From: Magallana gigas
Taxonomy: Eukaryota
Reading direction: 5' to 3'
Length of the DNA: 64,000 nucleotides
NCBI RefSeq assembly: GCF_963853765.1
Contig: NC_088860.1
Coordinates: 11,284,001-11,348,000, forward strand
In this document: positions 33,392-54,041 of the stretch, one piece after another
Layout of the letters: the number at the start of each line of letters is the position of its first letter
Numbering within the stretch: the stretch's first letter is position 1
Made by a program: the position numbers and the translations under genes
The notes under the pieces: generated by a model
Told to the model about the DNA's origin: nothing
What the model saw: only the letters and a program-made list of their open reading frames with translations
The model's database searches: none

Positions 33392-33467
<76 letters not shown>
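33388..33467. repeat. (TA)n microsatellite, ~40 units
   Basis: Uninterrupted TATATA run about 350 bp upstream of the DUF885 gene ATG. Confidence 0.95.
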
Positions 33468-33469
<2 letters not shown>

Positions 33470-33817
33470 TAAAATTATGAAGTCATTTAAATATAATTTG
33501 AATTATAATCAAACACAACAAATGATACATAAATCAAACTGTAAGACTTTTACAATGTAGTTGCTTTACTCTTTTTAATTTAATTAGAAATAATTTTTAA
33601 ATTCGAACACGCAGTGAATGAACATACATATAAAAGAAGCGTCCTGAACCTAATTGCCCCTAAAAAAACCAGTGTTGCATTTTGCATAACAAAAACATCA
33701 CACCTTGTTATCCAATCATTTCACAGCTCTGCTGGAGGGAGATACATGTAGAAATGACTTAATACCGGTACAGAGGGTGAATTTGGCCACTACCTGCCGC
33801 GGTAACCAAAGCCAAGG

Positions 33818-36800
33818 ATGCAGAGTGCCGGTGGAGTGACTGTGTTTTGTTTGGTTATTTTGGGCTTTGTGCAAGCTTCTCAAGGTAAATATTGCCGGTA
33901 GAAATCTGCTATTTGTTACCGCAATTATTCATTTAGGAACAAACCGCAATTAATTGCACCAATTTAGATTCAGTTATATACATGTTACTTGCTAAAATTT
34001 GTATTTTTACGGTACTAGTAAGTTGTTATCAATTTGCACCAGTATTCAATAAAAACTTACTAAAATCATTTTACTAAAAAGTTGCTAATGAATCTAATTT
34101 TCTTATCAATTAATACATTGGGAAATAACTCTCATCTGGTTGTTTAATTTTAATTTTAGCATATTGTTTTTATTTTTGATATTGTTGTTTTATTTTTGCC
34201 CAAAGTCCGTGGTCTACATAAATATCCAGGAAGTGGGGTTGTCAATTCTAATGGCTTTATCATTTTGACAAATATGAAGGACACGACATAACATTTTCAC
34301 ATTTAAGTTGTGACGTAACAAGGCCCAGACAAACCATTAAACATTTTGCAATTAAATTTGTCTTTGAGGTCAATATCTTGACACGAAACAGAGAAAAATC
34401 GTGCAATTTGGAAAACATTAAAACGTTTAAAACCATTTCATATTTCTTTAGCTGAACTTTTCCATTTATCAAATTTGATTAACAAGTGGGAAAAAAATTA
34501 GCAAAATATTTTGGCATCTTTTTTCTAATGCACATATTTTTACTGGAACCGGTAAAGATAAGACATTGTTGTGACATAATATCTTAAATTGCTTTTACAA
34601 CTTATGATTGCATGTCCAATACTTTGATTTCCCTTTGCATTCTTTGTCATATCTCCCCTTTTCCTCAAATATATTCAACATACTGCCTGTCTAGCTTTTT
34701 CGTAAATAGTTTATGATGAAAGAATATGCATGTATGTGTTCATGGAAGCTTATCAATCTGAATCTACCGAAAAAAAAATTGGTTTATTATTAAGCTTTAT
34801 ATTTATTATCAATTCAACCTATGATTTAATTAAGTTGCAAATAGTTGCAAATACATGTATACTGTATACCTTTTTACATGTTCGCCAGACGTAAAATGTA
34901 AGAAAACTGCGGGATAAATATACTTATACTAGTGACTTTAATAAAATAATCAAATTAAAGAATCCCCATAAAATTCTTAACCCAAAGTATTTGCAAAGAA
35001 ATTTATTAGCTAAACTTTACGAGTGGGTATGGTACATACAGCGTTATTGAGGTATTTCATCTATTCATGATATGATTGTTTTATTCAACACAAACAAAAA
35101 TACTGATAAGAAGGGGTTTTCCTCCATTTCTTACAAAACTTAACCTTGCATAAGAAATGCTAGTTACCCCCCCCCCCCCCTCCGACGATCAATTACGAGC
35201 ACTTGGTGTACCCGCGAGATTTTAGCAATGAAATATTGGCTGACGATTTGAAGAATTTCGTCAAGACATCTGCATGGCATGAGGGTATACATGTACCAGC
35301 AAAAGATGGCTGGCTCAGGCAATCGCAGCAACACCGGCGGTATTTAGTACATCTGCCCGCAGGGAATAGTGGGTATTATCGCGGATAATATGGCAAACGA
35401 CCCGGATCATTAGCAGACGTACACCTATTTACTGGGTTAATCAGGTCAAGACGCCTGGATTCTGGTGGAAAAATGTCTGCTCCACTCGTTTTTGGATTTC
35501 GATGTCTGGGAAGTGCGCATTTTATGAATGAATTTTAAGAGATGCTTATCGGGGATAGGACATTCTTATAGTTCTTATAGACGCGGGCGGTTTTGAAGGG
35601 TCTTTAATGCATCAAACTTAAGGTATATCTGCAAGTTGATAACAGACAGACAGCTAATTTCATTGGTCGGTTATACTTATCTTATATAGCAAGGAATCTG
35701 GATGATGTTTTAGGTTTTACTTGGGCTTCGTACTGTCATTGTAGTACTAGCATATCGCCAACCAAAGCTGCACTGCGTGAATATGACACATTGTTTGAAA
35801 TAAATTTTAACCTATCTAAAAATAATGACCTTGCACTTGGTATTCAATCTAACACTGACTTGAAATTTTTACCCCAAATTTATTAAGGTTGTGCAAACGG
35901 TGTATTATAACACCAAATAGTCTTGCAACTCGTAACATGTCTGACACTGACCTTTGAAAGATTTGACCTTTGATATCCAGTCGGTCATTAAGTTTAGAAT
36001 TTGGTCATGACTTAGTCAATCTGTAATTTTTAGCTTGGATTTTGTCTTTTTGCTAGTTGGAGTTTAATAGATTGCTCTAACCTTTGATATTAATTAACCT
36101 CATTATGACGCCACTCTTGTCCTTAAGCTTCTGCTTCGTCTTTACAGTGCTTGCTCAGTCAAGTTACAAAATGAGACATAATTAAGCATCCAAAACATTT
36201 TAATTTGCAGGGTTTTAACCAATTGTAGGAGTTAACTATACATTTCAGGTCAGGAAGGTCTGAAACTGCGAGCCTTGGAGCAGAAGCTGTTGGAGATCAT
36301 ACAAGACGAGTTTCCAGAATTCTCTGAATCCTCGGGGCTTTCCCCGAACGACGGACGGGCGGAGTCCTACACATTCCAGGGGTTCGAGAGACGAAACGTT
36401 AGAATCATCGCATACTAGTTTTACAACCAGAAAAAAATATTAAAGCAAAAACGACTTCTATATACAGTGTAGTACTGTACTTAAATAGTGTGTTTCCAGT
36501 TCCACGGCAGAGTAATAATTAAGTTATTCTTATTTTGGTCTCTACTGTCTTCAAAACAATCTTATGTCATAATACAAAACAATACTACAAAACTAAAAAC
36601 CACTTACAAAAAAAGTTTCCTACTTTAAGCCCCCCTTTATAACTTTCATGAACGCTAATTTCACTTAAAAGAAATTCGTGGTACATTGATATGAAATTTC
36701 AATAAAACGTCTTTCATTTTCAATTTGCAATGAAAAACCTATTCTTAATTTAGTTCAATTATTCCTTTCATTTTTGTCTGGTTTGTTATCTCTGACATAC

Positions 36801-39800
36801 GTGAACATGTGAATTATCAATCCTACATGCATCCTTTAAAACAGAGATATCTAAGTAGGTATCTTAAGGATATAAAGATTAGAGTCTTAATATGTAGTAC
36901 TGATTTTTATACCGATAAAAGATTAAGAAGTTACAAAAAGTTTTTTAATTGTGGTTTTGTGTTCGTCTGGATCTGATAACCAAGTTTTTCAAAGGAATGA
37001 GTGATTTATGCTTGATTATTCCCGTACAACCTGACTACGCAAAATGGGCATTGTTTATTTGGGGGTAAAATGAAATTAATTTTATTTGTCTACACACAGA
37101 ACCGGAATATACAGCTCCTGCAGCAGCTGGAAAATATAGACAGAAACCCACTGAGCCGGGATGAATTGAATGATTGGAAAATACTGCGCTATCACGTCCA
37201 AACTATATTGAAAGGCTACAAATTCAGAGAGTAAGTTACAGGCAATCATTTCACCTATGTCCAGCCGTCGATCAAAAAAGTATGCATTGTAATTATGCAT
37301 AATTGAAAAATATTGCAATGCCACGTCCAAACAATATAAAAACGTCTTAAGAAAACCTTTAGAAAAAAGGATAAATTACTAGCAACCTTTTTACTTTTAA
37401 TCACCAGTATCAGTCTGAAAAATGCAAGATTTTATATATAGCGCATATTTGATTGTTACGTATTTCATGGACATTGTAATGCTATTTTGCTTTGTTTTAC
37501 AGATGGGGACATCTAAACCCGATCAATTTCCTCGAGGCACCTTTGAAGCACCGCGACTGGATTACTAAGAAGACGACACAAGACCGGGAGAAATATGTTT
37601 TACGACTTCAAGCCATTCCACAGCAAGCAAGTTTAACTTGATCTGAGATTTTCATCAATTCAGAATGTTAAGAATAATGTTAAACTTTAGAGAAAAAAAT
37701 TAAGGTCTGACTAATAATTTTTCTCCGACGAGAAGGTAAATCATTTTTCATTTGAACCGCATTACATCACACTCAAAAGCTGGAAAACAACAAACTTTAA
37801 GATAGTTCTTTTTATACTTGGAAACTGAATGTCCATTAAAAAGCTTAATAACAATCAAAAGAAGTAGATAAAGTACACATTGAAATCATAAAAAACAGAC
37901 GAAGTAGGAATATACAGTCAGAAATCAAATACATGTACTAGATGAATAGGAATACATTGATGATATTCCTGGGCTGTTTCCTTGCTTCAATTAAAGTTAA
38001 CTACGGTAAGTTTCCTTTAGGAGCAATAAATGTGTTTTTCATTTCTGTAGATTGAAGAGCAAATTTCACTCATGAGAAGAGCCATCAAACTGAACAGGAC
38101 CAACCATTTCATATCTATGGTAGCAATTCCTTACTATACTAGTATATATATGTTTGTGACATATACCGTGGAATCATTTGATTTCGTGGGGGCCAATTTT
38201 CGTGGATTGTGGTGTTGTTTTTTTTGCTTATTCGCGGGGTGTAATTTCGTGAATGCGTCGGTTTTAGTTTTTAGTAACAAAGATAACTCTTTCTATATTT
38301 GTTTTCGTAGAGGATGTAAATTCGTGGAGGAAAGGTACCCACGAATACCACGAAAATTGAGCCATCACGAACTCTAAAGATTCCACAGTATATTTAATAA
38401 ATTTTCATAATTTCACTTTTTCGATTAGAAACAGTTTCAAATTACCGGTATAATAGACGATGAAATCTTACATGTATACAGCTTATATACACTGAATAAT
38501 TATTATTTGATAATTTTTCCTCTAGCGACTCTACTAGAGATTTTTTTTAAAAAATCAGATTTAAAAAAAAATCATACAGCTTCATTACATGTTGGTCACC
38601 TTATCTTTCCTTTGAAAAAACTCAAAACTCAAAACGTTTTAGGTAATCCATGTTATTAAATTTCTAACGTGCTATTTACTTTTATTTGTGATAAATTTCT
38701 TCCTCATATCAAATAATTTTAAGATAAATTATAATTATGGAACGTCATTTACAGAACGGGACTCTAGAGAGCATATGGAGTGACGTGTTCCTCGTATACC
38801 AACACCAAAATCGGAAAAGTGTGAATGGTTCTTCGCAACACTCTCAGAGGTATGCATCCTTTATCTTATCGCCAGATATCAGATAAAAATTGATGACTGT
38901 TGGAATTGCCGTTTTATTGCAACTGTAATCAGAAAAGCCGCACTAAATATATCCATTGGCTGTCGTATTGTGTCTGTGGCTTCAAAATTGGCATGGTTGG
39001 CCTTTGGGTTAAGGTCAAATACAATCTGATATTGGCCTTCCCGTAATTTGCAGCAAATATTTATTTTTTTTATCAAAATCAAGGTTAGGTTATATATTTA
39101 CTGATCCGCAGCCCGTTTTTCAAAGTAATTTGTTATCATAAAATACAAAGAATATAGTTACATGTATGTATTATGCTATTTGTGTAATGTATGTAGTTTT
39201 AGGAGTAAATAATTTGATTTTTGCAAGGGAAAATGACACATACAATCTTCATACACGAAGCACAACTGGTGTCTGGTATACCAAATGAACCGGAGTCAGA
39301 ATTGATTACTTATAAGTATAAGATTCCTACACAAAATTCAAATTTATGACATGACCACGATTTTTTTGTTATTATATGAGCTGTAACAATTGCTAATTGT
39401 TGGGTACAGTTAAATACACGATGACCAATAGATATTTTTTAATCTTATATAGTCTACAGCATAAAAATAGCTAATCATAATTTAAATTAGCTCTTTTTGT
39501 TTTTAGTATCATTGAACTTAAAAAGCATCCACCTGTCATTAAAAGTGATTGCTAAACAAATGTTTTCATTTGCACAACATCTTGTTTGAACTGTTTGTAT
39601 TTATTTCACCGGCCCATAGCAATCTTCTAAAGGCTTGGAACCTTAGTACAGACAAACTAGCCGAGTCATTGATGAATCTACAGACTTTTATTAGCACGGT
39701 CAGTGATTAACATTATAATTCGTGCATTTTTTTTAAATTCCTCTATACTAGTACAAGAATTCTTAATTTTCGAATTCAGAAGAATAAATATTAAATAAAT

Positions 39801-42705
39801 GCTACTAGCAATCAGAGAAGATTTTTTTTTCTAATTTTAAGTAAGAGTAAAATCCAAAATAAAAAAGAAAAATGGTAAACTAAGTAAAGAAACATAATAT
39901 TTGATGTAATTTTTTAGTAAAATGAAGGTGTTAATTACCTCTAGTAGGAATATTTCCCGGCGACACGTCCGAACATCGGGGTCCATTCCATGCCGGGGGG
40001 TCAGGAGTACTACCAGGCCTGTCTGGACTACCACTTAGGGACCCACCTCACCCCCTCACAAATACACAGCCTGGGGTATCGGGAGGTGGAGCGGTTAGAA
40101 GGACTTATGAGAAAGGTACGAAATTTTGTGATTGGTTATCTTTATTTTTGCTGTCAAAGAGTTCATTAAATTCCGGAAGTATATGTGCTTGGTTTATTTG
40201 AAAAATATGTAATTTCAGATTATGATACAGCATAGATTTACCGGGAAAATATCCGAATTCCTCCAATTTTGGCAAACGAAAAACCGCCAACAAGACAAAA
40301 AGGTAAGACATTACAGATTTATTTTCAAGAGAAATACTTTAAACTTTAAACGATTATAATTGTATACGATGTACTTGCGAAATAAAGGAAGACTGTCACT
40401 CTCTCATCTTTTACAGTGGAACATTTACCAGGTATACAGGGGCGTCATTGACCGCGCGCGCGACTCGCTGTGGCGGGTCTTCCACAGAATTCCACTAACC
40501 CCTTTACGGTATTAACCATTTGTAATTTACCAATTAACACTGTTTCTTTTTATAATGAGTTACCAAAATACATAAGAAAGGTACACTGCAAATCGAATAC
40601 CTTAAACAATGCTTTTTTATTGATTTTCCAGAATTGAGTTATTCAACAATTCCAGAGTTCCGGCAAGAGGCCATTACACCAAAAATGTGTTCTACCTTAA
40701 TACATTCTATGAGAATAGGTAATGCAACATATTGTAGGCAATGTAATAAAAAACGTCTGAAATCTCTAATTTTAATAAATATACCCAAAGTATTGTTGAT
40801 TTCAGCGTCATGTATAACTACATGTACTAGTAATGTATAAATTTGTTCATGCTTTAACGAAATTAACCCCGTGTAATGTTATCTATCTCTATTCTAAATT
40901 CGAAATATAATAATTCATTTAACTTGACACGGAAATGTCTTCCTAAAAAAACGGAATCATAAAAAGCTTTCTGTTGTAGGACCAATTCTAATGTCCTCCC
41001 ATTGGCTTTTCACGAAACCTACCCAGGGCACCATTTTCAGGTAAAAGTGACGTCATCTCTTGTAATCCTTTGGAGAATGTTTTGTAAGTTCATGTTACAT
41101 GTAATGTTTCATTAGCTACATGTATATTTTGGAATCTTAACGACACAATTAAATTAATGAGGATTGTTATGACGTCATCACTTTAGGAATGTTACAAGAG
41201 GCAGCAGAATCTACCGCTGTACCGGCAGTATCCGTTATACCGGCGGAGGTTCGCAATACCGTTCACATACCCAACCTATGCAGCATATTCAGAGGTAGGG
41301 TTTAATGAAGTCTAAATAGTGAAAACAGGGGTTAGAAAATGGGAAATTCATTCTAGCCGGTATAAATGATTGTAATTTGAATTAATATTTATTTCATGAT
41401 ACATTACAATTGTTTTTCTCAAAAAATTAACAGTTTAGAATATTTCTCGTACTTGTGTTCATAATCTTTGCATCTTTCTTTTCTGAAGGGATGGGCACTG
41501 TATGCGGAACATTTAGGGATAGAATTAGGCTTCTATGAGACTCCTGTCGACATGTGAGTTATATTGTTCGGTTTTTGTTACAGCATTTCCTGATCTTACC
41601 CATCATGTTTAGTTTCAAAATAACATACTGTGCTATTTAAAATACCGATATATTAAAGTAGTGGAATCTTGAAAACGGTTGAAATTTGTTTCAGGTTTCA
41701 AAAATATATGTCGGAAATATTCAGGGCTTGTCGCTTGGTAGTGGACACGGGTATCCATGCTTTTGGGTGAGTAGTGTTTTTATAGATCATTTAAATATCT
41801 TTTAACCTTATAAATATTAAAAGTCTATTTCTTCAAATGAACATGTACCAATTGATGTGAACAGTTTTGTTCCATGATCTTCTTCAGATGGACAAAAGAA
41901 AGGGCTATCAAGTTTATGAAAAAATATACAAACGCGCCAACAGGAGAAGTTGCTAGGGAGATAGATAGGTATATCACGTGGCCTGGACAAGCATGTGCTT
42001 ATAAAGTAGGGGAGTTGAAAATCAGGGAACTTCGCCGACGGGCAGAAACTATGTTAGGTAAGGCTATGTGAACCCATTATATCAATGATACGGCAGTGTT
42101 GATTACTAATACCAGGTGTCTATGGAGGCTGGGTGGTCAACAAATTAACCATAGATCTAGATCTGCTTAGAATTTCAAGATATTATTTGTTTAGCTGCAA
42201 ACTATTATTTTGTAAAAACCTAGTATACATTTAACCTTTAAAATTTAGACACATTTTATATTTTGATATAGAGCTCTTCTTCTATAGGAAATCAGTTTAG
42301 TCAAAAAATGGCCACGACCATCGAGCCATCTTAATTCTTTTTAAAAAGAGAGTCGTTCAATCTTACACAAATCTTGTACCTCCGGATAATGATATTGAGC
42401 TTTAGCATCAATAATAATCTTGTCTGGTTATCGAAACCTACCCATCATTCCATTTCACAGGTAACAAGTTCAGTGTCAAAGATTTCCATCACCAAATACT
42501 AAAGTTAGGACCTATTGGGCTTGATATCCTGGAGGAAATCATCAACGATTGGATAGCCAGTGCCACGCCCCTAGTGGCACCAAACCCAAACCCAATACTG
42601 TCTCCTCACACCTCATCGGCTGCAGGACAAACCACTGCATCTTGTTTGTTTCATATATCACTGTTTTTGTCCCTTGTAGTTCATTTGTTATGTAGGCGAT
42701 TTTAA
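33818..42705 (+). CDS. DUF885-family protein with signal peptide and putative GPI-anchor signal, ~621 aa
   Basis: Exons 33818-33884, 36249-36397, 37100-37230, 37503-37626 (GC donor), 38051-38119, 38755-38849, 39620-39698, 39948-40115, 40219-40302, 40417-40508, 40632-40718, 40980-41040, 41187-41294, 41489-41553, 41695-41766, 41888-42057, 42461-42705 are phase-consistent. DUF885 motifs: [75 protein letters not shown](S)VKDFH. Confidence 0.9.
38165..38388. mobile_element. Tc1/mariner-type MITE in a DUF885 gene intron
   Basis: TA|CCGTGGAATC ... GATTCCACAG|TA with TTTCGTGG/CCACGAA subterminal motifs. A degenerate relative lies near 48674-48845. Confidence 0.65.
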
Positions 42706-43482
42706 CGTCTATCATTGTTATGTAGAGGGTTATTTTTGTATTGAATGTTGTTATTATTTATTTTGGAATATGTCAATGTGGGTATGCATTCGTTTCAGAC
42801 TTTGTTCATCTTTTAAATGTTGCAGCAGTCGTTTGCAGATTGAGTAGAAGCTTTCATTTTTTTAAGAATTCAGAATTGTTTACTTTTTTGATAGTCTTAT
42901 TGTATAGTTGTTTATTTTGTGCTCAAATAAAGCCATAATTTTGCCTTCCTATGCGGTGAATGTAATTTAGGGTGCTCTGAATTGTTATTATACAGAGAAA
43001 ATTTAACGTTTAAGGAATATTATGTGAAAAACTAGTAGTTTGATTATATCTTATACAGAAAAATATATATAAGAATGGTGTTTTTGTTGCGGGGGTTTTG
43101 CTGTTGGCTGCTAAGCATTTACATTAAATATCGGTCATTATGATGCCTCTTTAGTTATTAACTCAAATCGAGATGTACAGTTCTAATTTATTGTAATCTA
43201 CAAAGCAGATTTTTATTGACACTGTAATATATATAGATATCTTTTATGTACCTATATAATGACTGTTTTATAATCCACATCATGGAAAACAGTTATAAGA
43301 TAAACTAGTGTTATTTTCTTTTTGATTTTTATTTAGCTTTAAAAAATGTAATGACAAACAACTGACATCTTTGACAACAAAACAATTCCAAACAATAAAA
43401 GTATTAAACTTGTAGAACACAAAATCAATACATTCACTATTAACAACTTTCAAATGCAAAAATATAGTAAAATAAACAAAAA

Positions 43483-51200: not shown

Positions 51201-54041
51201 ATAAGACTGGTAAAAATCGTAGTTAAATAGTGGATGCAAGGGAGGGGAGGGGGGGGGGGGGGGTGGGGGGCAATGTAAAGATCAAGCAGATAGTTTATGT
51301 AATTAAATAATGATCCTCAAAATAGAGCTATGCTAACTATATAATATTTTACATTTGTAATTACATTAACATTCCCGAATTTTTCATAATAAAATACAGG
51401 TAATTCTCAAGTAAGGACAGGCTATAATTGTTATCACAACATAATTCACACCTCTTGTTCTGAACGATATAAAACGACATAACTTCATAAAATTAATAAA
51501 TAAAAATCCTAATAAAGCAAGCACGCTGTCTTGGCCGTGCATGCATAAAAGCAAGCACCGTTTCAATGGGTTTTTAAAAACATATTTCAATTCTTGTATA
51601 GGTAATAATTAATTTCAGAGGAAAAATGATACGAGAAAAGTATCTTAATACAGTAAGATGTTTTGCTCTGAGGCAGGTGCGAAACATCGAGGTGCGAAAC
51701 ATCTCAGAACGAAACAGAATAGGTGCGAACCATCCCGGATTCCAATAATCGATGACGCATATTGCTTCCCAAAAAACGCCACCTGGCGTTTATTTGTGCG
51801 TCCGCTTGTTTCATGTTGATGTATGTTCGTTTTACATTTATGTCTGTTGGTTTTACTTTTTGTGTTTGATTTGTAGTTAGATATCTTTGGTTGATTTTAT
51901 GTACATTTATTTTGCAAAGAAGACTGTTGGTTTTGCACTTATGGTCATTGATAATATTATTTAAGATTGCTGAATTGAGTTTATCGTTGATTTTGTAAAA
52001 TTGTATTTTTTGCCCTTTCCGCTGCCCATATTACAATAAAATATTTTTATAAGTTATCAATTGTAGCAAAATCCAAAAACATTTGTTATGACTCGATAAA
52101 AACCCTTTCTGTTCATACATGTACATGATTTTGCTGTAAAACGCATGGCTGTAATGTCTAATTATCTTAAATTTGAAAAGATTTTCAACGAGTAAATTGT
52201 TAAACCAAATGCTCTTAAATTCTGTAATTTGTTGGCAGATACATGTACCAACTCGATTTTTTAAAAAGTTAACTCGTACATTCATAATTAAATAACTCGT
52301 ACATTCATAATTAAATATATGACGTTTTCTGTTTTCCACAAACATATAATCTACATGTATAGCTATGCTCTTCAAGAATGTTATTTAATACGTACATATT
52401 GTAACTCTATTACTCAAATGAATGAAAGATACATGTAGATCTATTGTATTAATTGTCACACGGTTGTTGAAAATAAACATCTTGGTTTAATTTGTATGTC
52501 CTCTTTATAAACAACTACGAAATGAATATTGTTTACTTTTTTAATATCGCATGTTCATCTTAAAAAATTCTTAATCCAGCAGATGTTAAATCAACAAGAA
52601 ATATCTGTAATTTCATACGTGGTGCATTTAAAATAAGAACATCTAGTATGTACTAAATATTTGTCTATATGTATGACTTGCGCCACATGTGGTTTTTGTC
52701 AATGAATTGAATATACTAGTATATAATAATTTGTACCTCTTGTAACATTCATGTAAAATTCGTAATGTGAATAAGTTGAATTGAATTTCTTTAGTTGCGG
52801 TATGTTGCAAGCCATACTCTCAGACTATGTAATTACGTGTATACACACTAAACATGTTCAAATTAATTAAAAGACCTAAAATTCGATTACATCTGGTGTT
52901 TCAGAATAGAATTTCCTTCAAATTTCGCCCTAATAACTTTAAAAAATCGTAATTCACATGATTCAAGCGATCTACGACTTTTACCTACATTTATGTATCA
53001 TAAATAACTTTTTTTCATAACTCCAGAGGTTATTCTCATTTTCAAACTTGACTTGTAGCAGCTCTGAACTTAGCAACACAAATAAGTTTGGAATGCCTGC
53101 ACGATAAGTCTGAATGAGTTTGTGTTGATCGGCTGTAAATCATTACATATGGTTACATTTAAAGAGACCTAGCTATTTATTGGCTATTCCCTGTCCCCTT
53201 TTTTCTTTAACATCATATCTAGAGCTTTATTTTATATTGAAAGAATGTAAGGACCTGTTATCATGGGATTTTTGTAAAACACAGGAAGATTAGAGCACAC
53301 CATGTGATAATAAGAATAAACAACACGCATTAAAATAGGCGATTAGGAGTGGACATTGAGGGAATATTGTTTCTCGAGGAGAGGCACTTAATAGATATCA
53401 AACTACAAGTTATTATATAAAGTTGTTAACGTTTTATGATAATATTATTTTTTCGTGGAAAACAAAACAGAAATCGAAACAACGACATGAAATTTCGCTA
53501 CTTGCAGAAGTTGTAGTATGTCTTCAGAGGTTTTGGACCTTACCAAATTATCAATTGATTTCACAATATAAATGCACACGTGTTTTGATAACGTGAAGGA
53601 AAAGACAAGAAAGAAAGAGAGAAAAACTACAAGTAAATTAAAATAGCAAATACTCAATGCTTATCTCTAAACTCTGAATAAATGGCATTTTAAGAATCTC
53701 CATACTTCCTCAATCCACTCACCAATGTTAACGAGTCGGACATTGTCTTCCATGATGGCTTTACAGGCCAGGGCCACATTCTGGATCATTTGAATCCGCC
53801 CCGTGGGGTTGGGGATGACCTTCCCGATCTTCTTGAACTGTAGTGATTCAACCAGCGCCACCAAAGTAACTCCATCACAGAAATCCTTCTCGATGTCCTG
53901 TATGACCCGCCCACTAACACTCAACTGTTCATTTATCCAGTTAGTGAACGTCTTCCTCTGAATCTCCACCCAGCGGTTCTCCGGAGACACCTTACTGAGC
54001 TCTTTCTCCTGGGAGGGGCTGGCGGGCTCCACCGTTGACAT
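43483..54041 (-). CDS. Short filamin-like actin-binding protein (3 calponin-homology domains + about 8 filamin Ig repeats), ~1125 aa
   Basis: Exons 54041-53723, 49897-49702, 49609-49544, 49451-49238, 49105-48994, 48567-48380, 48092-47937, 47489-47358, 47220-47094, 47003-46866, 46732-46556, 46392-46249, 46138-46013, 45889-45743, 45629-45525, 45409-45224, 45103-44999, 44773-44597, 44457-44308, 44171-44004, 43727-43483; all GT-AG and in phase. CH1 WVEIQRKTFTNW..EDIVNGNVKLILGLLWHLI; CH2 FTSDWSTG..DELSAMTYLSYF; CH3 TDWNDG..DHLSVMTYLNRF; Ig motifs such as VPGSPF, VRVYGPG and AGAGQLAVRIRGP. Confidence 0.9.
45139..45200. repeat. (AG)n microsatellite inside a 120-nt filamin intron
   Basis: About 31 AG units, read as (CT)n on the transcribed strand. 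Confidence 0.95.
49981..52032. mobile_element. Foldback-type non-autonomous DNA element with ~335-bp terminal inverted repeats (filamin intron 1)
   Basis: 49981-50315 and 51698-52032 are reverse complements at high identity (AATATGGGCAGCGGAAAGGG.../...CCCTTTCCGCTGCCCATATT). The direct repeat TTACAA occurs at 49977-49982 and 52031-52036. Confidence 0.85.
50461..50598. mobile_element. G/C-tract MITE nested in the foldback element
   Basis: Perfect 16-bp TIR CAGGCACGTAGCATCG/CGATGCTACGTGCCTG, TCCAT on both flanks, and long G and C runs. Confidence 0.8.

What the first reader, a model, noticed from the sequence alone, without database searches (positions are those of the whole stretch)
33818..42705. 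Intron-rich DUF885 gene encoding a predicted secreted, GPI-anchored metallo-hydrolase of a mostly bacterial family
Seen: an N-terminal signal peptide ([20 protein letters not shown]), a full DUF885 domain with HETYPGHH and a downstream EGWALYAE, then a P/S/T-rich linker, small residues (SSAAG) and a hydrophobic tail ([20 protein letters not shown]). Established: DUF885 is an uncharacterised family known mainly from bacterial lipoproteins. Inference: the HExxxxH(H)...E arrangement resembles a zincin-type metal site, and a lipoprotein anchor may have been functionally replaced by a GPI anchor. This would be an uncharacterised cell-surface enzyme, either an ancient horizontal acquisition or a family lost in many animals. 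Seventeen exons show it is fully domesticated rather than contamination.
Basis: partly seen in the sequence, partly recalled or inferred. Interest (0 to 1): 0.75.

Follow-up and report, generated by a model that had tools for sequence, protein, structure and literature searches.

The report
Oyster DUF885 surface metallopeptidase-like gene
This is a real, expressed 17-exon Pacific oyster gene for an uncharacterised zinc-peptidase-like (DUF885) protein that probably sits on the cell surface; it descends from an ancient animal gene and was not recently acquired from bacteria.

Summary
Window 33818-42705 (+) carries a 17-exon, 621-aa gene. My hand-built model is letter-identical to RefSeq XP_019922541.3 (Magallana gigas LOC105327651, named "DUF885 domain-containing protein" in UniProt). 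RNA contigs from three studies splice introns 3-15 exactly as predicted.

The protein is a full-length PF05960 member (360.6 bits). Its AlphaFold2 model (pLDDT 90.9) matches solved DUF885 structures at Z 28-37. After those, it matches only zincin metallopeptidases. HExxPGHH and EGWxLYxE are invariant in 87 homologues.

It has a signal peptide on its own exon, a disordered P/S/T linker and a terminal hydrophobic tail. That tail recurs, without sequence conservation, in mollusc orthologues, so a GPI anchor is plausible but unproven.

The horizontal-transfer reading fails:
- The gene lies in a mollusc-only clade inside a well-supported Metazoa clade (98/98).
- Grouping it with bacteria is rejected (AU p=0.0014).
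- 14 of its 16 introns share position and phase with sponge, amphioxus and horseshoe-crab homologues.

Sponge, cnidarian, deuterostome and protist homologues lack both signal and tail. The surface form therefore looks like a lophotrochozoan derivative of a cytosolic enzyme, not a replaced lipoprotein anchor. It is an ordinary, already annotated gene of unknown biochemistry.

The parts
33818..33884 (+). Exon 1: start codon and signal peptide (residues 1-22; predicted cleavage after A20, VQA|SQ). It is followed by the only intron not shared with other animal DUF885 genes (phase 1, 2364 bp).
36249..36397 (+). Exon 2: start of the DUF885 domain ([10 protein letters not shown]...).
37100..37230 (+). 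Exon 3.
   Evidence: joint 37230>37503
37503..37626 (+). Exon 4, followed by the GC-AG intron (donor GCAAGT).
   Evidence: joint 37626>38051 GC..AG in X1 and X3
38051..38119 (+). Exon 5.
38755..38849 (+). Exon 6.
39620..39698 (+). Exon 7.
39948..40115 (+). Exon 8.
40219..40302 (+). Exon 9.
40417..40508 (+). Exon 10.
40632..40718 (+). Exon 11.
40980..41040 (+). Exon 12, carrying HETYPGHH (residues 393-400, window 41011-41034). H393, E394, P397, G398, H399 and H400 are invariant in 87 homologues.
41187..41294 (+). Exon 13. Its last codon is the invariant E438.
41489..41553 (+). Exon 14, starting with GWALYAE (residues 439-445). G439, W440, L442, Y443 and E445 are invariant.
41695..41766 (+). Exon 15 ([12 protein letters not shown]; R473, V475, D477 and G479 are invariant).
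41888..42057 (+). Exon 16 (WTKERA...[17 protein letters not shown]). This is the best-conserved block: 76.7 bits to PF05960 on its own.
42461..42705 (+). Exon 17: end of the domain; disordered P/S/T linker (residues ~577-601, window 42568-42642); candidate omega site S592-A594 (42613-42621); hydrophobic tail residues 602-618 (42643-42693); RRF; stop codon at 42703-42705.
42926..42931 (+). AATAAA polyadenylation signal, about 220 nt after the stop codon.
   Evidence: read directly from the sequence

Best explanation
This is Magallana gigas LOC105327651. It is an expressed, vertically inherited 17-exon gene for a 621-aa member of the DUF885 family (PF05960, Pfam clan Peptidase_MA).

Shown:
- The gene model and its splicing.
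- Family membership.
- A two-lobed helical fold identical to solved DUF885 structures and otherwise resembling only zincin metallopeptidases: MATCAP, M32 carboxypeptidases, M3 oligopeptidases, M1/M4 catalytic domains and M2 ACE.
- Strict conservation of H393, E394, H399, H400, E438 and E445.
- Placement in a mollusc-only paralogue clade nested within Metazoa.
- An intron map inherited from the common ancestor of sponges and bilaterians.

Inferred:
- The protein enters the secretory pathway through the signal peptide encoded by exon 1 (cleavage around A20|S21). It carries 6 N-x-S/T sequons.
- The C-terminal signal (small residues S592-A594, a 6-7 residue spacer, a 17-residue hydrophobic tail and only 3 residues after it) is exchanged for a GPI anchor. 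The catalytic domain would then sit on the outer face of the plasma membrane on a flexible P/S/T stalk.
- It works as a zinc-dependent peptidase. H393 and H399 or H400 plus E438 would bind the metal and E394 would act as the general base. The closed M32/M3-like channel would restrict it to short peptides, most likely as a carboxypeptidase or oligopeptidase acting on extracellular peptides.

Evolutionary reading: the ancestral animal enzyme was cytosolic. A lophotrochozoan duplicate gained a 5' signal-peptide exon and a 3' extension of the last exon, then diversified in molluscs.

My confidence by component:
- Gene and family: about 0.99.
- Vertical descent, no mollusc-level horizontal transfer: about 0.9.
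- Extracellular location: about 0.8.
- GPI anchor rather than a transmembrane anchor: about 0.6.
- Active zinc peptidase: about 0.6.
For: Gene model:
- The hand-built model equals XP_019922541.3. An exact spliced aligner reproduces it.
- RNA contigs from runs X1, X3 and X7 show the joints of introns 3-15. One 1490-nt contig spans exons 3-16.
- An AATAAA signal lies about 220 nt after the stop.

Family and fold:
- PF05960 scores 360.6 bits over residues 45-566.
- PDB sequence hits are 3o0y (2.7e-49), 3iuk and 3u24.
- The AF2 model has pLDDT 90.9 and pTM 0.89.
- VIA-align gives 3o0y Z 36.8 (536 aligned residues), 3iuk Z 34.0 and 3u24 Z 27.9. Next come MATCAP Z 13.5, the M32 enzyme BsuCP Z 12.8 (359 residues), M3 oligoendopeptidase F Z 11.9, Dcp Z 11.4, neurolysin Z 10.4 and ACE about Z 9.5.
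- In the unbiased search of 48,161 chains, every non-DUF885 hit with Z of 8.2 or more is a zincin peptidase or the M1-derived TAF2 subunit of TFIID, apart from one Chloroflexus hydrolase entry (3cmn) that its depositors call a novel fold.
- Invariant residues are listed.

Published support:
- Pfam places DUF885 in the Peptidase_MA clan, and ZincSight predicts an enzymatic two-His-plus-Glu zinc site in a DUF885 model (PMC12572635).
- IPR010281 appears among PDB zinc sites (PMC4539273).
- A 599-aa DUF885 protein in spider venom was reported with an M32-like fold (PMC7682650).

Phylogeny and introns:
- Careful IQ-TREE analysis (LG+C20 by PMSF, 78 rows): Metazoa 98/98, window clade of 13 molluscs 100/100.
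- AU test rejecting window clade plus prokaryotes: p=0.0014, delta lnL 85.7.
- Intron sharing.

Targeting:
- Signal peptide and tail survey across clades.
- ShK (extracellular, disulfide-rich) domains are fused to gastropod members of the same clade.
Against: - No DUF885 protein has a demonstrated activity in the literature I could search.
- The motif is HExxxxHH with a Pro-Gly break between two helices, not the canonical HExxH.
- Z scores of 10-13 can arise among unrelated helical proteins, according to the tool's own note.
- The GPI call rests on hand-made heuristics only; no SignalP or NetGPI was run. The tail contains two His residues and ends in RRF, so a short transmembrane anchor is not excluded.
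- My strict tail detector missed several orthologues whose tails are visible by eye.
- The root of the family tree is unresolved. The ichthyosporean, the chytrids and one prokaryotic metagenome sequence sit in a weakly supported basal region at 77/97. A very ancient bacterial origin of the whole eukaryotic family therefore cannot be judged.
Confidence: 0.72

Rival explanations
1. Horizontal transfer: the gene, or its mollusc clade, was acquired from bacteria and later gained introns.
For: Pfam describes the family as bacterial. Bacterial homologues (31-33% identity) are about as similar to the oyster protein as non-mollusc animal homologues are (about 33%). One exon is 63% identical to a bacterial lipoprotein-like sequence.
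Against: The window clade is nested inside a Metazoa clade supported at 98/98. The AU test rejects joining it to prokaryotes (p=0.0014). 14 of 16 introns match sponge, amphioxus, Limulus and an oyster paralogue in both alignment column and phase. The equal similarity is explained by the long branch of the oyster lineage.
Confidence: 0.03
2. Same protein, but anchored by a single C-terminal transmembrane helix as a type I membrane protein with a 3-residue cytoplasmic stub, or simply secreted after tail removal, rather than GPI-anchored.
For: In the AF2 model the tail (602-620) forms a helix. The tail ends with RRF, which fits the positive-inside pattern. Some clade B relatives lack any tail and would be soluble. 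No GPI predictor was run.
Against: The hydrophobic stretch is only about 17 residues and includes two His. In most orthologues 0-5 residues follow the stretch. Small-residue triplets lie 6-10 residues upstream in most of them. This is the textbook GPI-signal architecture (my own knowledge).
Confidence: 0.25
3. The protein is a catalytically inert binding or scaffold protein, a pseudo-peptidase, that only keeps the zincin fold.
For: No activity is known for any DUF885 protein. The motif is non-canonical. One zincin-fold match, the TAF2 subunit of TFIID, is itself a pseudo-enzyme. A bacterial DUF885-annotated outer-membrane protein has been discussed in the context of host vitronectin binding; I saw only the title and abstract of that paper (PMC10281475).
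Against: H393, E394, H399, H400, E438, E445, Y443, R473, D477 and Y522 are invariant across 87 sequences, from bacteria to animals and across cytosolic and secreted forms. That pattern is expected for a catalytic site, not for a binding surface. A published predictor classed a DUF885 zinc site as enzymatic.
Confidence: 0.2
4. Assembly contamination, or a mis-predicted gene assembled from chance ORFs.
For: None beyond the family's bacterial reputation.
Against: The same protein is encoded on a 51-Mb chromosome-scale record. It is spliced in RNA from three studies. It lies next to a CH-domain (filamin-like) gene. GC content is 28-39%, like the flanks. Orthologues exist in other oysters at 67% identity.
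Confidence: 0.005

Closest known systems
Solved bacterial DUF885 proteins: 3O0Y (Colwellia lipoprotein), 3IUK (Arthrobacter), 3U24 (Shewanella lipoprotein)
   Same: Same Pfam family. Same fold over about 500-535 residues (Z 28-37, rmsd 3.3-3.5 A). Same HExxPGHH and EGWxLYxE motifs.
   Different: Only 17-24% identity. The bacterial proteins have signal or lipoprotein N-termini and no C-terminal extension. The oyster protein has a eukaryotic signal-peptide exon, N-glycosylation sequons, a P/S/T stalk and a C-terminal hydrophobic signal.
Cytosolic animal DUF885 proteins (for example M. gigas P0354/P0350, Branchiostoma C3Y2L0, Saccoglossus, Sycon, Nematostella)
   Same: Same family and the same intron map: 14-15 of 16 introns shared. 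Same catalytic-motif residues.
   Different: 29-35% identity. They have no signal peptide, no tail and 10-15 cysteines, and they evolve slowly. The window gene belongs to a fast-evolving lophotrochozoan branch with secretory signals.
M32 carboxypeptidases (Taq-type; BsuCP 3HQ2, T. cruzi MCP-1 3DWC), M3 oligopeptidases and M2 ACE
   Same: Two-lobed helical gluzincin architecture aligned over about 350-385 residues (Z 9.5-12.8). The title of PDB entry 3IUK itself states a fold similar to M32 carboxypeptidases, as I remember its full wording; the tool output cuts the title short. All belong to the same Pfam clan, Peptidase_MA.
   Different: No detectable sequence similarity: Pfam reports only DUF885 at E up to 1. 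The motif is HExxxxHH with a Pro-Gly helix break instead of HExxH. No activity has been demonstrated.
MATCAP (KIAA0895L, tubulin tyrosine carboxypeptidase; 7Z5G/7Z6S)
   Same: Best non-DUF885 structural match (Z 13.5, 241 residues). From my own knowledge, it is also an atypical gluzincin with an extended HExxxH motif.
   Different: About 10% identity and a much smaller protein (about 330 residues in the solved chain). It is cytosolic and binds microtubules. It covers only the catalytic lobe.
GPI-anchored ectopeptidases of animals, such as membrane dipeptidase and carboxypeptidase M (from my own knowledge)
   Same: The predicted overall layout is the same: signal peptide, zinc peptidase domain, and a C-terminal small-residue site plus a hydrophobic tail.
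   Different: Unrelated folds and families. GPI anchoring of the oyster protein is only predicted.

Membership tests
Pfam PF05960 (DUF885) | Full-length match to the family HMM above the gathering score. | tested here: met
   360.6 bits against a cut-off of 32.4; residues 45-566 match profile positions 1-530 of 532. Separate exon pieces hit the profile in collinear order.
Pfam PF05960 (DUF885) | Family-wide invariant motifs HExxPGHH and EGWxLYxE. | tested here: met
   H393, E394, P397, G398, H399, H400, E438, G439, W440, L442, Y443 and E445 are invariant in the 87-sequence alignment A1.
Pfam PF05960 (DUF885) | Same three-dimensional fold as solved members. | tested here: met
   AF2 model pLDDT 90.9. 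3o0y Z 36.8 with 536 aligned residues; 3iuk Z 34.0; 3u24 Z 27.9.
Clan MA gluzincin metallopeptidases (M32/M3/M2-like) | Zincin catalytic fold. | tested here: met
   In an unbiased search of 48,161 chains, all non-DUF885 hits with Z of 8.2 or more (up to 13.5) are zincin peptidases or their derivative TAF2, apart from one hydrolase entry (3cmn) described as a novel fold.
Clan MA gluzincin metallopeptidases (M32/M3/M2-like) | Canonical HExxH motif on one helix. | tested here: not met
   The sequence is H393-E-T-Y-P-G-H399-H400. In the model, helix 387-394 ends at HE and a new helix begins at H399.
Clan MA gluzincin metallopeptidases (M32/M3/M2-like) | Third metal ligand (Glu) on a downstream helix, with geometry able to bind zinc. 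| tested here: inconclusive
   The invariant E438 lies at the start of helix 434-450. Model coordinates are not readable from scripts, so no distances were measured.
Clan MA gluzincin metallopeptidases (M32/M3/M2-like) | Zinc-dependent peptide hydrolysis. | not testable with these tools
   No biochemical report on any DUF885 protein was found.
GPI-anchored surface proteins | Cleavable N-terminal signal peptide. | tested here: met
   By heuristic only: a 10-residue hydrophobic core (mean Kyte-Doolittle 3.2) starting at residue 9, with V at -3 and A at -1 before S21. It is encoded on its own exon and is present in almost all full-length members of the clade. SignalP was not available.
GPI-anchored surface proteins | C-terminal signal: small omega, omega+1 and omega+2 residues, a short polar spacer, then a hydrophobic tail reaching the C-terminus. 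| tested here: met
   By heuristic only: S592/S593/A594 are candidate omega residues, G596-S601 is the spacer and the tail is 602-618 followed by RRF. The same architecture, without sequence conservation, occurs in bivalve, gastropod, chiton and clade B relatives. NetGPI was not available.
GPI-anchored surface proteins | Actual GPI attachment (PI-PLC release, C-terminal processing). | not testable with these tools
   This needs an experiment.
Bacterium-to-animal horizontally transferred genes | Recipient clade nested among bacterial sequences, apart from other animals. | tested here: not met
   The window clade lies inside Metazoa (98/98). The AU test rejects window clade plus prokaryotes (p=0.0014).
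Bacterium-to-animal horizontally transferred genes | Introns absent or lineage-specific. | tested here: not met
   14 of 16 introns are shared in alignment column and phase with Sycon, Branchiostoma, Limulus and an oyster paralogue. A 15th lies within 2 columns in the same phase.

The most novel reading that the evidence does not exclude
A lophotrochozoan lineage converted an ancient cytosolic clan-MA enzyme into a family of surface-tethered (GPI) or secreted ectopeptidases. The conversion added one signal-peptide exon and extended the last exon. The family then expanded in molluscs into at least two clades, with oysters keeping one member of each alongside the cytosolic form. In gastropods some members are fused to ShK domains. 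Secreted DUF885 proteins also turn up in a gastropod venom-candidate transcript list and in spider venom. If the enzyme is active, this would be an unrecognised class of invertebrate extracellular peptide-processing enzymes with an atypical HExxxxHH zinc site.
Probability: 0.4. Interest if true: 0.5.

Novelty: new member of a known kind. Interest (0 to 1): 0.3.

Why it matters
DUF885 is a large family: the one-exon query alone found 2850 cluster representatives at E up to 0.001. Structures have been solved, but I could find no reported biochemical function. It is present in most non-vertebrate animal phyla and did not appear in vertebrates or insects in my searches.

The oyster gene itself is ordinary and already annotated. 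What this work adds:
- The bacterial-transfer idea can be dropped. The intron map is shared with sponges.
- Animals have two cell-biological versions of the enzyme: an ancestral cytosolic one and a derived lophotrochozoan extracellular, probably GPI-anchored one. That gives a concrete, testable handle (express the ectodomain, test zinc content and peptidase activity) on an orphan peptidase-like family.

It does not open a long-standing question by itself.

Tried and rejected
- The search for homologous proteins cannot take a spliced protein by reference, and a single exon only finds fragments. I therefore used the one search of protein representatives on the best-conserved exon to reach full-length homologues. 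The listing of cluster members then gave an id (P0268) identical to my model.
- My first tblastn-based intron mapper missed short exons. I replaced it with an exact spliced aligner.
- NCBIfam gave no family for P0268.
- Pfam at E up to 1 gave no second family, so there is no direct sequence link to M32, M3 or MATCAP.
- Literature searches for DUF885, PF05960, IPR010281, LOC105327651 and the three PDB codes found no functional study. No supplement text was held for PMC4539273, so I could not find out which residues bind zinc in the crystals.
- Model coordinates are not exposed to scripts, so I did not measure metal-site geometry.
- The look-up of encoding contigs had no record for P0386, P0285 or P0181, and the Babylonia gene range was too long to return. 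Clade B and the gastropod clade A members are therefore missing from the intron comparison.
- The 74-aa ORF in intron 1 (35164-35385) has no Pfam hit and no place in any homologue alignment. I rejected it as an exon.

Full report
**Observation.** The + strand between 33818 and 42705 carries stop-free segments that match Pfam PF05960 (DUF885) in collinear order. Using splice-site consensus and tblastn with homologues, I assembled a 17-exon model. Its CDS is 1866 nt and encodes 621 aa. It has 15 GT-AG introns and one GC-AG intron (intron 4, donor GCAAGT). An independent exact spliced aligner that I wrote recovers the same 17 exons. The translated model is letter-for-letter identical to P0268 = NCBI XP_019922541.3, "uncharacterized protein [Magallana gigas]" (LOC105327651). 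UniProt entries of the same 90% cluster are named "DUF885 domain-containing protein", and the encoding record is 51 Mb long. So the window is Pacific oyster and the gene is already annotated. The signal-like N-terminus is residues 1-20. HETYPGHH is 393-400, EGWALYAE is 438-445 and SSAAG is 592-596. The hydrophobic tail is 602-618, followed by RRF and the stop codon. An AATAAA signal lies at 42926-42931.

**Expression.** Assembled contigs from three RNA data sets of different studies (X1, X3, X7) lie on the exons and skip introns 3 to 15 exactly at the predicted junctions. This includes the GC..AG intron (37626>38051). One 1490-nt contig runs from exon 3 to exon 16. A few raw poly(A) reads of run X20 show the same joints. 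Introns 1 and 2 lay outside the 6-kb stretch I was allowed to lay, and the intron 16 joint was not among the printed rows. A transcript-length Logan contig (1978 nt) from a related oyster encodes a collinear 622-aa protein with 88% identity, with no gaps at any exon junction.

**Family and fold.** The whole protein matches PF05960 at 360.6 bits (cut-off 32.4) over residues 45-566, which is profile positions 1-530 of 532. No other Pfam family appears at E up to 1, and there is no NCBIfam hit. By sequence it hits the three solved DUF885 structures: 3o0y (2.7e-49), 3iuk and 3u24. An AlphaFold2 model built on an 87-sequence alignment is confident (mean pLDDT 90.9, pTM 0.89). Residues 1-21 and 602-620 form terminal helices, and 588-601 are disordered. 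Structural alignment gives 3o0y Z 36.8 (536 residues, rmsd 3.4), 3iuk Z 34.0 and 3u24 Z 27.9. Next come MATCAP Z 13.5, the M32 carboxypeptidase BsuCP Z 12.8 (359 residues), M3 oligoendopeptidase F Z 11.9, Dcp Z 11.4, neurolysin Z 10.4 and ACE about Z 9.5.

Scores of Z 10-13 can be unspecific for helical proteins. I therefore ran the exhaustive search against 48,161 representative chains. Every non-DUF885 hit down to Z 8.2 is a zincin metallopeptidase or the M1-derived TAF2 subunit of TFIID, apart from one Chloroflexus hydrolase entry (3cmn) that its depositors call a novel fold. The peptidases are MATCAP, M32, M3, M1 catalytic domains, LTA4 hydrolase, thermolysin and LasB (M4), M36, M30 and ACE/ACE2. 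Unrelated helical proteins begin only below Z 7.8. The zincin relationship is therefore specific. It agrees with Pfam's placement of DUF885 in clan Peptidase_MA, as cited in PMC12572635.

**Candidate active site.** Across 87 homologues from bacteria, a protist and animals, the invariant positions are H393, E394, P397, G398, H399, H400, E438, G439, W440, L442, Y443, E445, L447, R473, V475, D477, G479, W485, P516, Y522 and G525. The first motif is not the canonical HExxH. HE ends helix 387-394, a Pro-Gly turn follows, and HH opens helix 399-407. E438 sits at the start of helix 434-450. This fits a gluzincin-like site with two His and one Glu as ligands and E394 as the general base. I could not measure the geometry, because coordinates are not exposed to scripts.

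Published computation points the same way. ZincSight predicted a two-His-plus-Glu site in a DUF885 AlphaFold model, and MAHOMES II classed it as enzymatic (PMC12572635). A survey of PDB zinc sites lists IPR010281 (PMC4539273). I found no biochemical characterisation of any DUF885 protein.

**Origin: distribution.** Searches with the C. virginica orthologue, a Limulus homologue and an amphioxus homologue show the family in many groups:
- Porifera (Sycon).
- Cnidaria (Nematostella, Orbicella, Acropora, Actinostola).
- Hemichordates and cephalochordates.
- Chelicerates, crustaceans and a myriapod.
- Annelids, a nemertean and many molluscs.
- An ichthyosporean and chytrid fungi, and a sequence labelled Colp12 in EukProt, which I take from memory to be a colponemid protist.

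No vertebrate, tunicate, echinoderm, insect or nematode appears among the best 120 hits of any search. That suggests loss in those groups but does not prove it.

**Origin: phylogeny.** I ran a careful IQ-TREE analysis (LG+C20+F+G4 by PMSF; 78 rows, 601 columns).
- All animal sequences fall in one clade, supported at 98/98.
- Within it, the window protein lies in a 13-member mollusc-only clade (100/100) that contains a chiton, gastropods and bivalves.
- That clade is sister (98/93) to a second clade of molluscs plus Lineus, which includes another oyster paralogue, LOC105326090.
- A third, slowly evolving lophotrochozoan clade holds two further M. gigas entries (P0354 and P0350).

Forcing the window clade to group with the 22 prokaryotic sequences costs 85.7 log-likelihood units and is rejected (AU p=0.0014). 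One caveat: I named that group after seeing the tree. The base of the eukaryotic part is unresolved. The ichthyosporean, the chytrids and one prokaryotic metagenome sequence sit on a weak 77/97 branch.

**Origin: introns.** This line of evidence is independent of the tree. I fetched the loci of an oyster clade-C paralogue, Branchiostoma, Sycon and Limulus and mapped their exons exactly.
- Of the 16 window introns, 14 fall in the same alignment column and phase as introns of these genes.
- Twelve of those are shared with all four species.
- A 15th lies 2 columns away in the same phase, within a variable region.
- Only intron 1, the phase-1 intron directly after the signal-peptide exon, is unique.

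The exon-intron structure therefore predates the split of sponges and bilaterians. Seventeen exons are a mark of ancient animal ancestry, not of domestication.

**Targeting.** I surveyed the N- and C-termini of labelled homologues.
- Window clade: almost all full-length members have an N-terminal hydrophobic signal and a 35-50-residue extension beyond the domain. The extension ends in a hydrophobic stretch of about 12-21 residues, followed by only 0-5 residues. Small-residue triplets lie about 6-10 residues upstream. The sequence of this extension is not conserved but its architecture is.
- Clade B: most members look the same, and a few lack the tail.
- Gastropod members of the window clade: some carry ShK domains (Pfam PF01549 on P0153; UniRef name of P0156). 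From my own knowledge these are extracellular modules.
- Clade C, cnidarians, hemichordates, amphioxus, the sponge, the ichthyosporean and Colp12: the protein starts directly with the domain (…FWxWRL…PEFAT…), ends right after it and has 10-15 cysteines. This is a cytosolic pattern.
- Arthropods: mixed.
- Bacteria: signal or lipobox N-termini and no tail.

For the window protein the candidate omega residues are S592-A594, the spacer is G596-S601 and the tail is 602-618. There are six N-x-S/T sequons. This is the textbook layout of a GPI signal. A short transmembrane anchor is not excluded, and no dedicated predictor was available.

The simplest history is that a lophotrochozoan duplicate of a cytosolic enzyme gained a 5' signal-peptide exon and a 3' extension of its last exon.

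**Surroundings.** GC content of the locus (28-39%) matches the flanks. Downstream, on the minus strand, an exon at 53667-54038 encodes a calponin-homology domain. This agrees with the first-stage note of a filamin-like gene there. Nothing suggests a bacterial insert.

**Verdict.** It is wrong on horizontal transfer and on anchor replacement. The gene is an ordinary, annotated member of a known but biochemically orphan family. What is modestly new is the split of animal DUF885 proteins into cytosolic and surface forms, and the intron evidence for deep animal ancestry.

Noticed in passing
window 38180-38379 (intron 5): RNA-contig depth here is 40-100 times that of the exons (for example 5753 against about 100-270 in X1). 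Many loose ends and variant letters are present. It looks like a dispersed repeat or transposable-element fragment that is transcribed elsewhere. It overlaps a 101-aa ORF at 38072-38377.
   Followed up: no
window 36780-37230 and 37627-37732: In all three RNA contig sets a contig runs unspliced through the end of intron 2 into exon 3. In X7 one also runs on into intron 4. This could be intron retention, pre-mRNA or an alternative 5' start. UniProt also lists 447-aa isoforms of this gene (P0272, P0274).
   Followed up: no
window 33400-33470: A (TA)n microsatellite lies about 350 bp upstream of the start codon. It reads as YIYIYI... in translation.
   Followed up: no
window 35164-35385 (intron 1): A 74-aa stop-free stretch follows a poly-C run. 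It has no Pfam hit and no counterpart in homologues, so it is probably not coding for this gene.
   Followed up: partly
L001 8001-9749; L002 8001-9848: A well-supported clade inside Metazoa (P0322, P0314, P0337 and about 17 more unnamed sequences) is encoded by intronless DUF885 genes. These sit on long (0.39-1.3 Mb), gene-sparse metagenome contigs. They come from unidentified eukaryotes whose DUF885 gene has lost all the ancient introns.
   Followed up: partly
P0153, P0156 (gastropod members of the window clade): ShK/ShKT domains are fused N-terminally to DUF885 in Plakobranchus and Lymnaea. A 606-aa DUF885 transcript is listed among the putative venom components of the snail Raphitoma purpurea (PMC11359391), and a 599-aa one is abundant in pholcid spider venom (PMC7682650).
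   Followed up: partly
P0001, P0002, P0005: Multi-domain proteins with two or three tandem DUF885 domains occur in Amycolatopsis (1654 aa) and in chytrid fungi (Boothiomyces 1690 aa, named LEM-domain protein in UniRef; Polyrhizophydium 1133 aa).
   Followed up: no
window 53667-54038 (- strand): An exon encodes a calponin-homology domain (PF00307, 1.1e-12). It belongs to the neighbouring filamin-like gene, which converges on the 3' end of the DUF885 gene.
   Followed up: partly
P0267-P0276 (alleles of the same gene): M. gigas and C. angulata database versions differ from the window protein at 6-23 of 621 residues. Differences include A595T/G596E next to the candidate omega site and changes in the last residues of the tail. 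None touches the invariant motif residues.
   Followed up: partly
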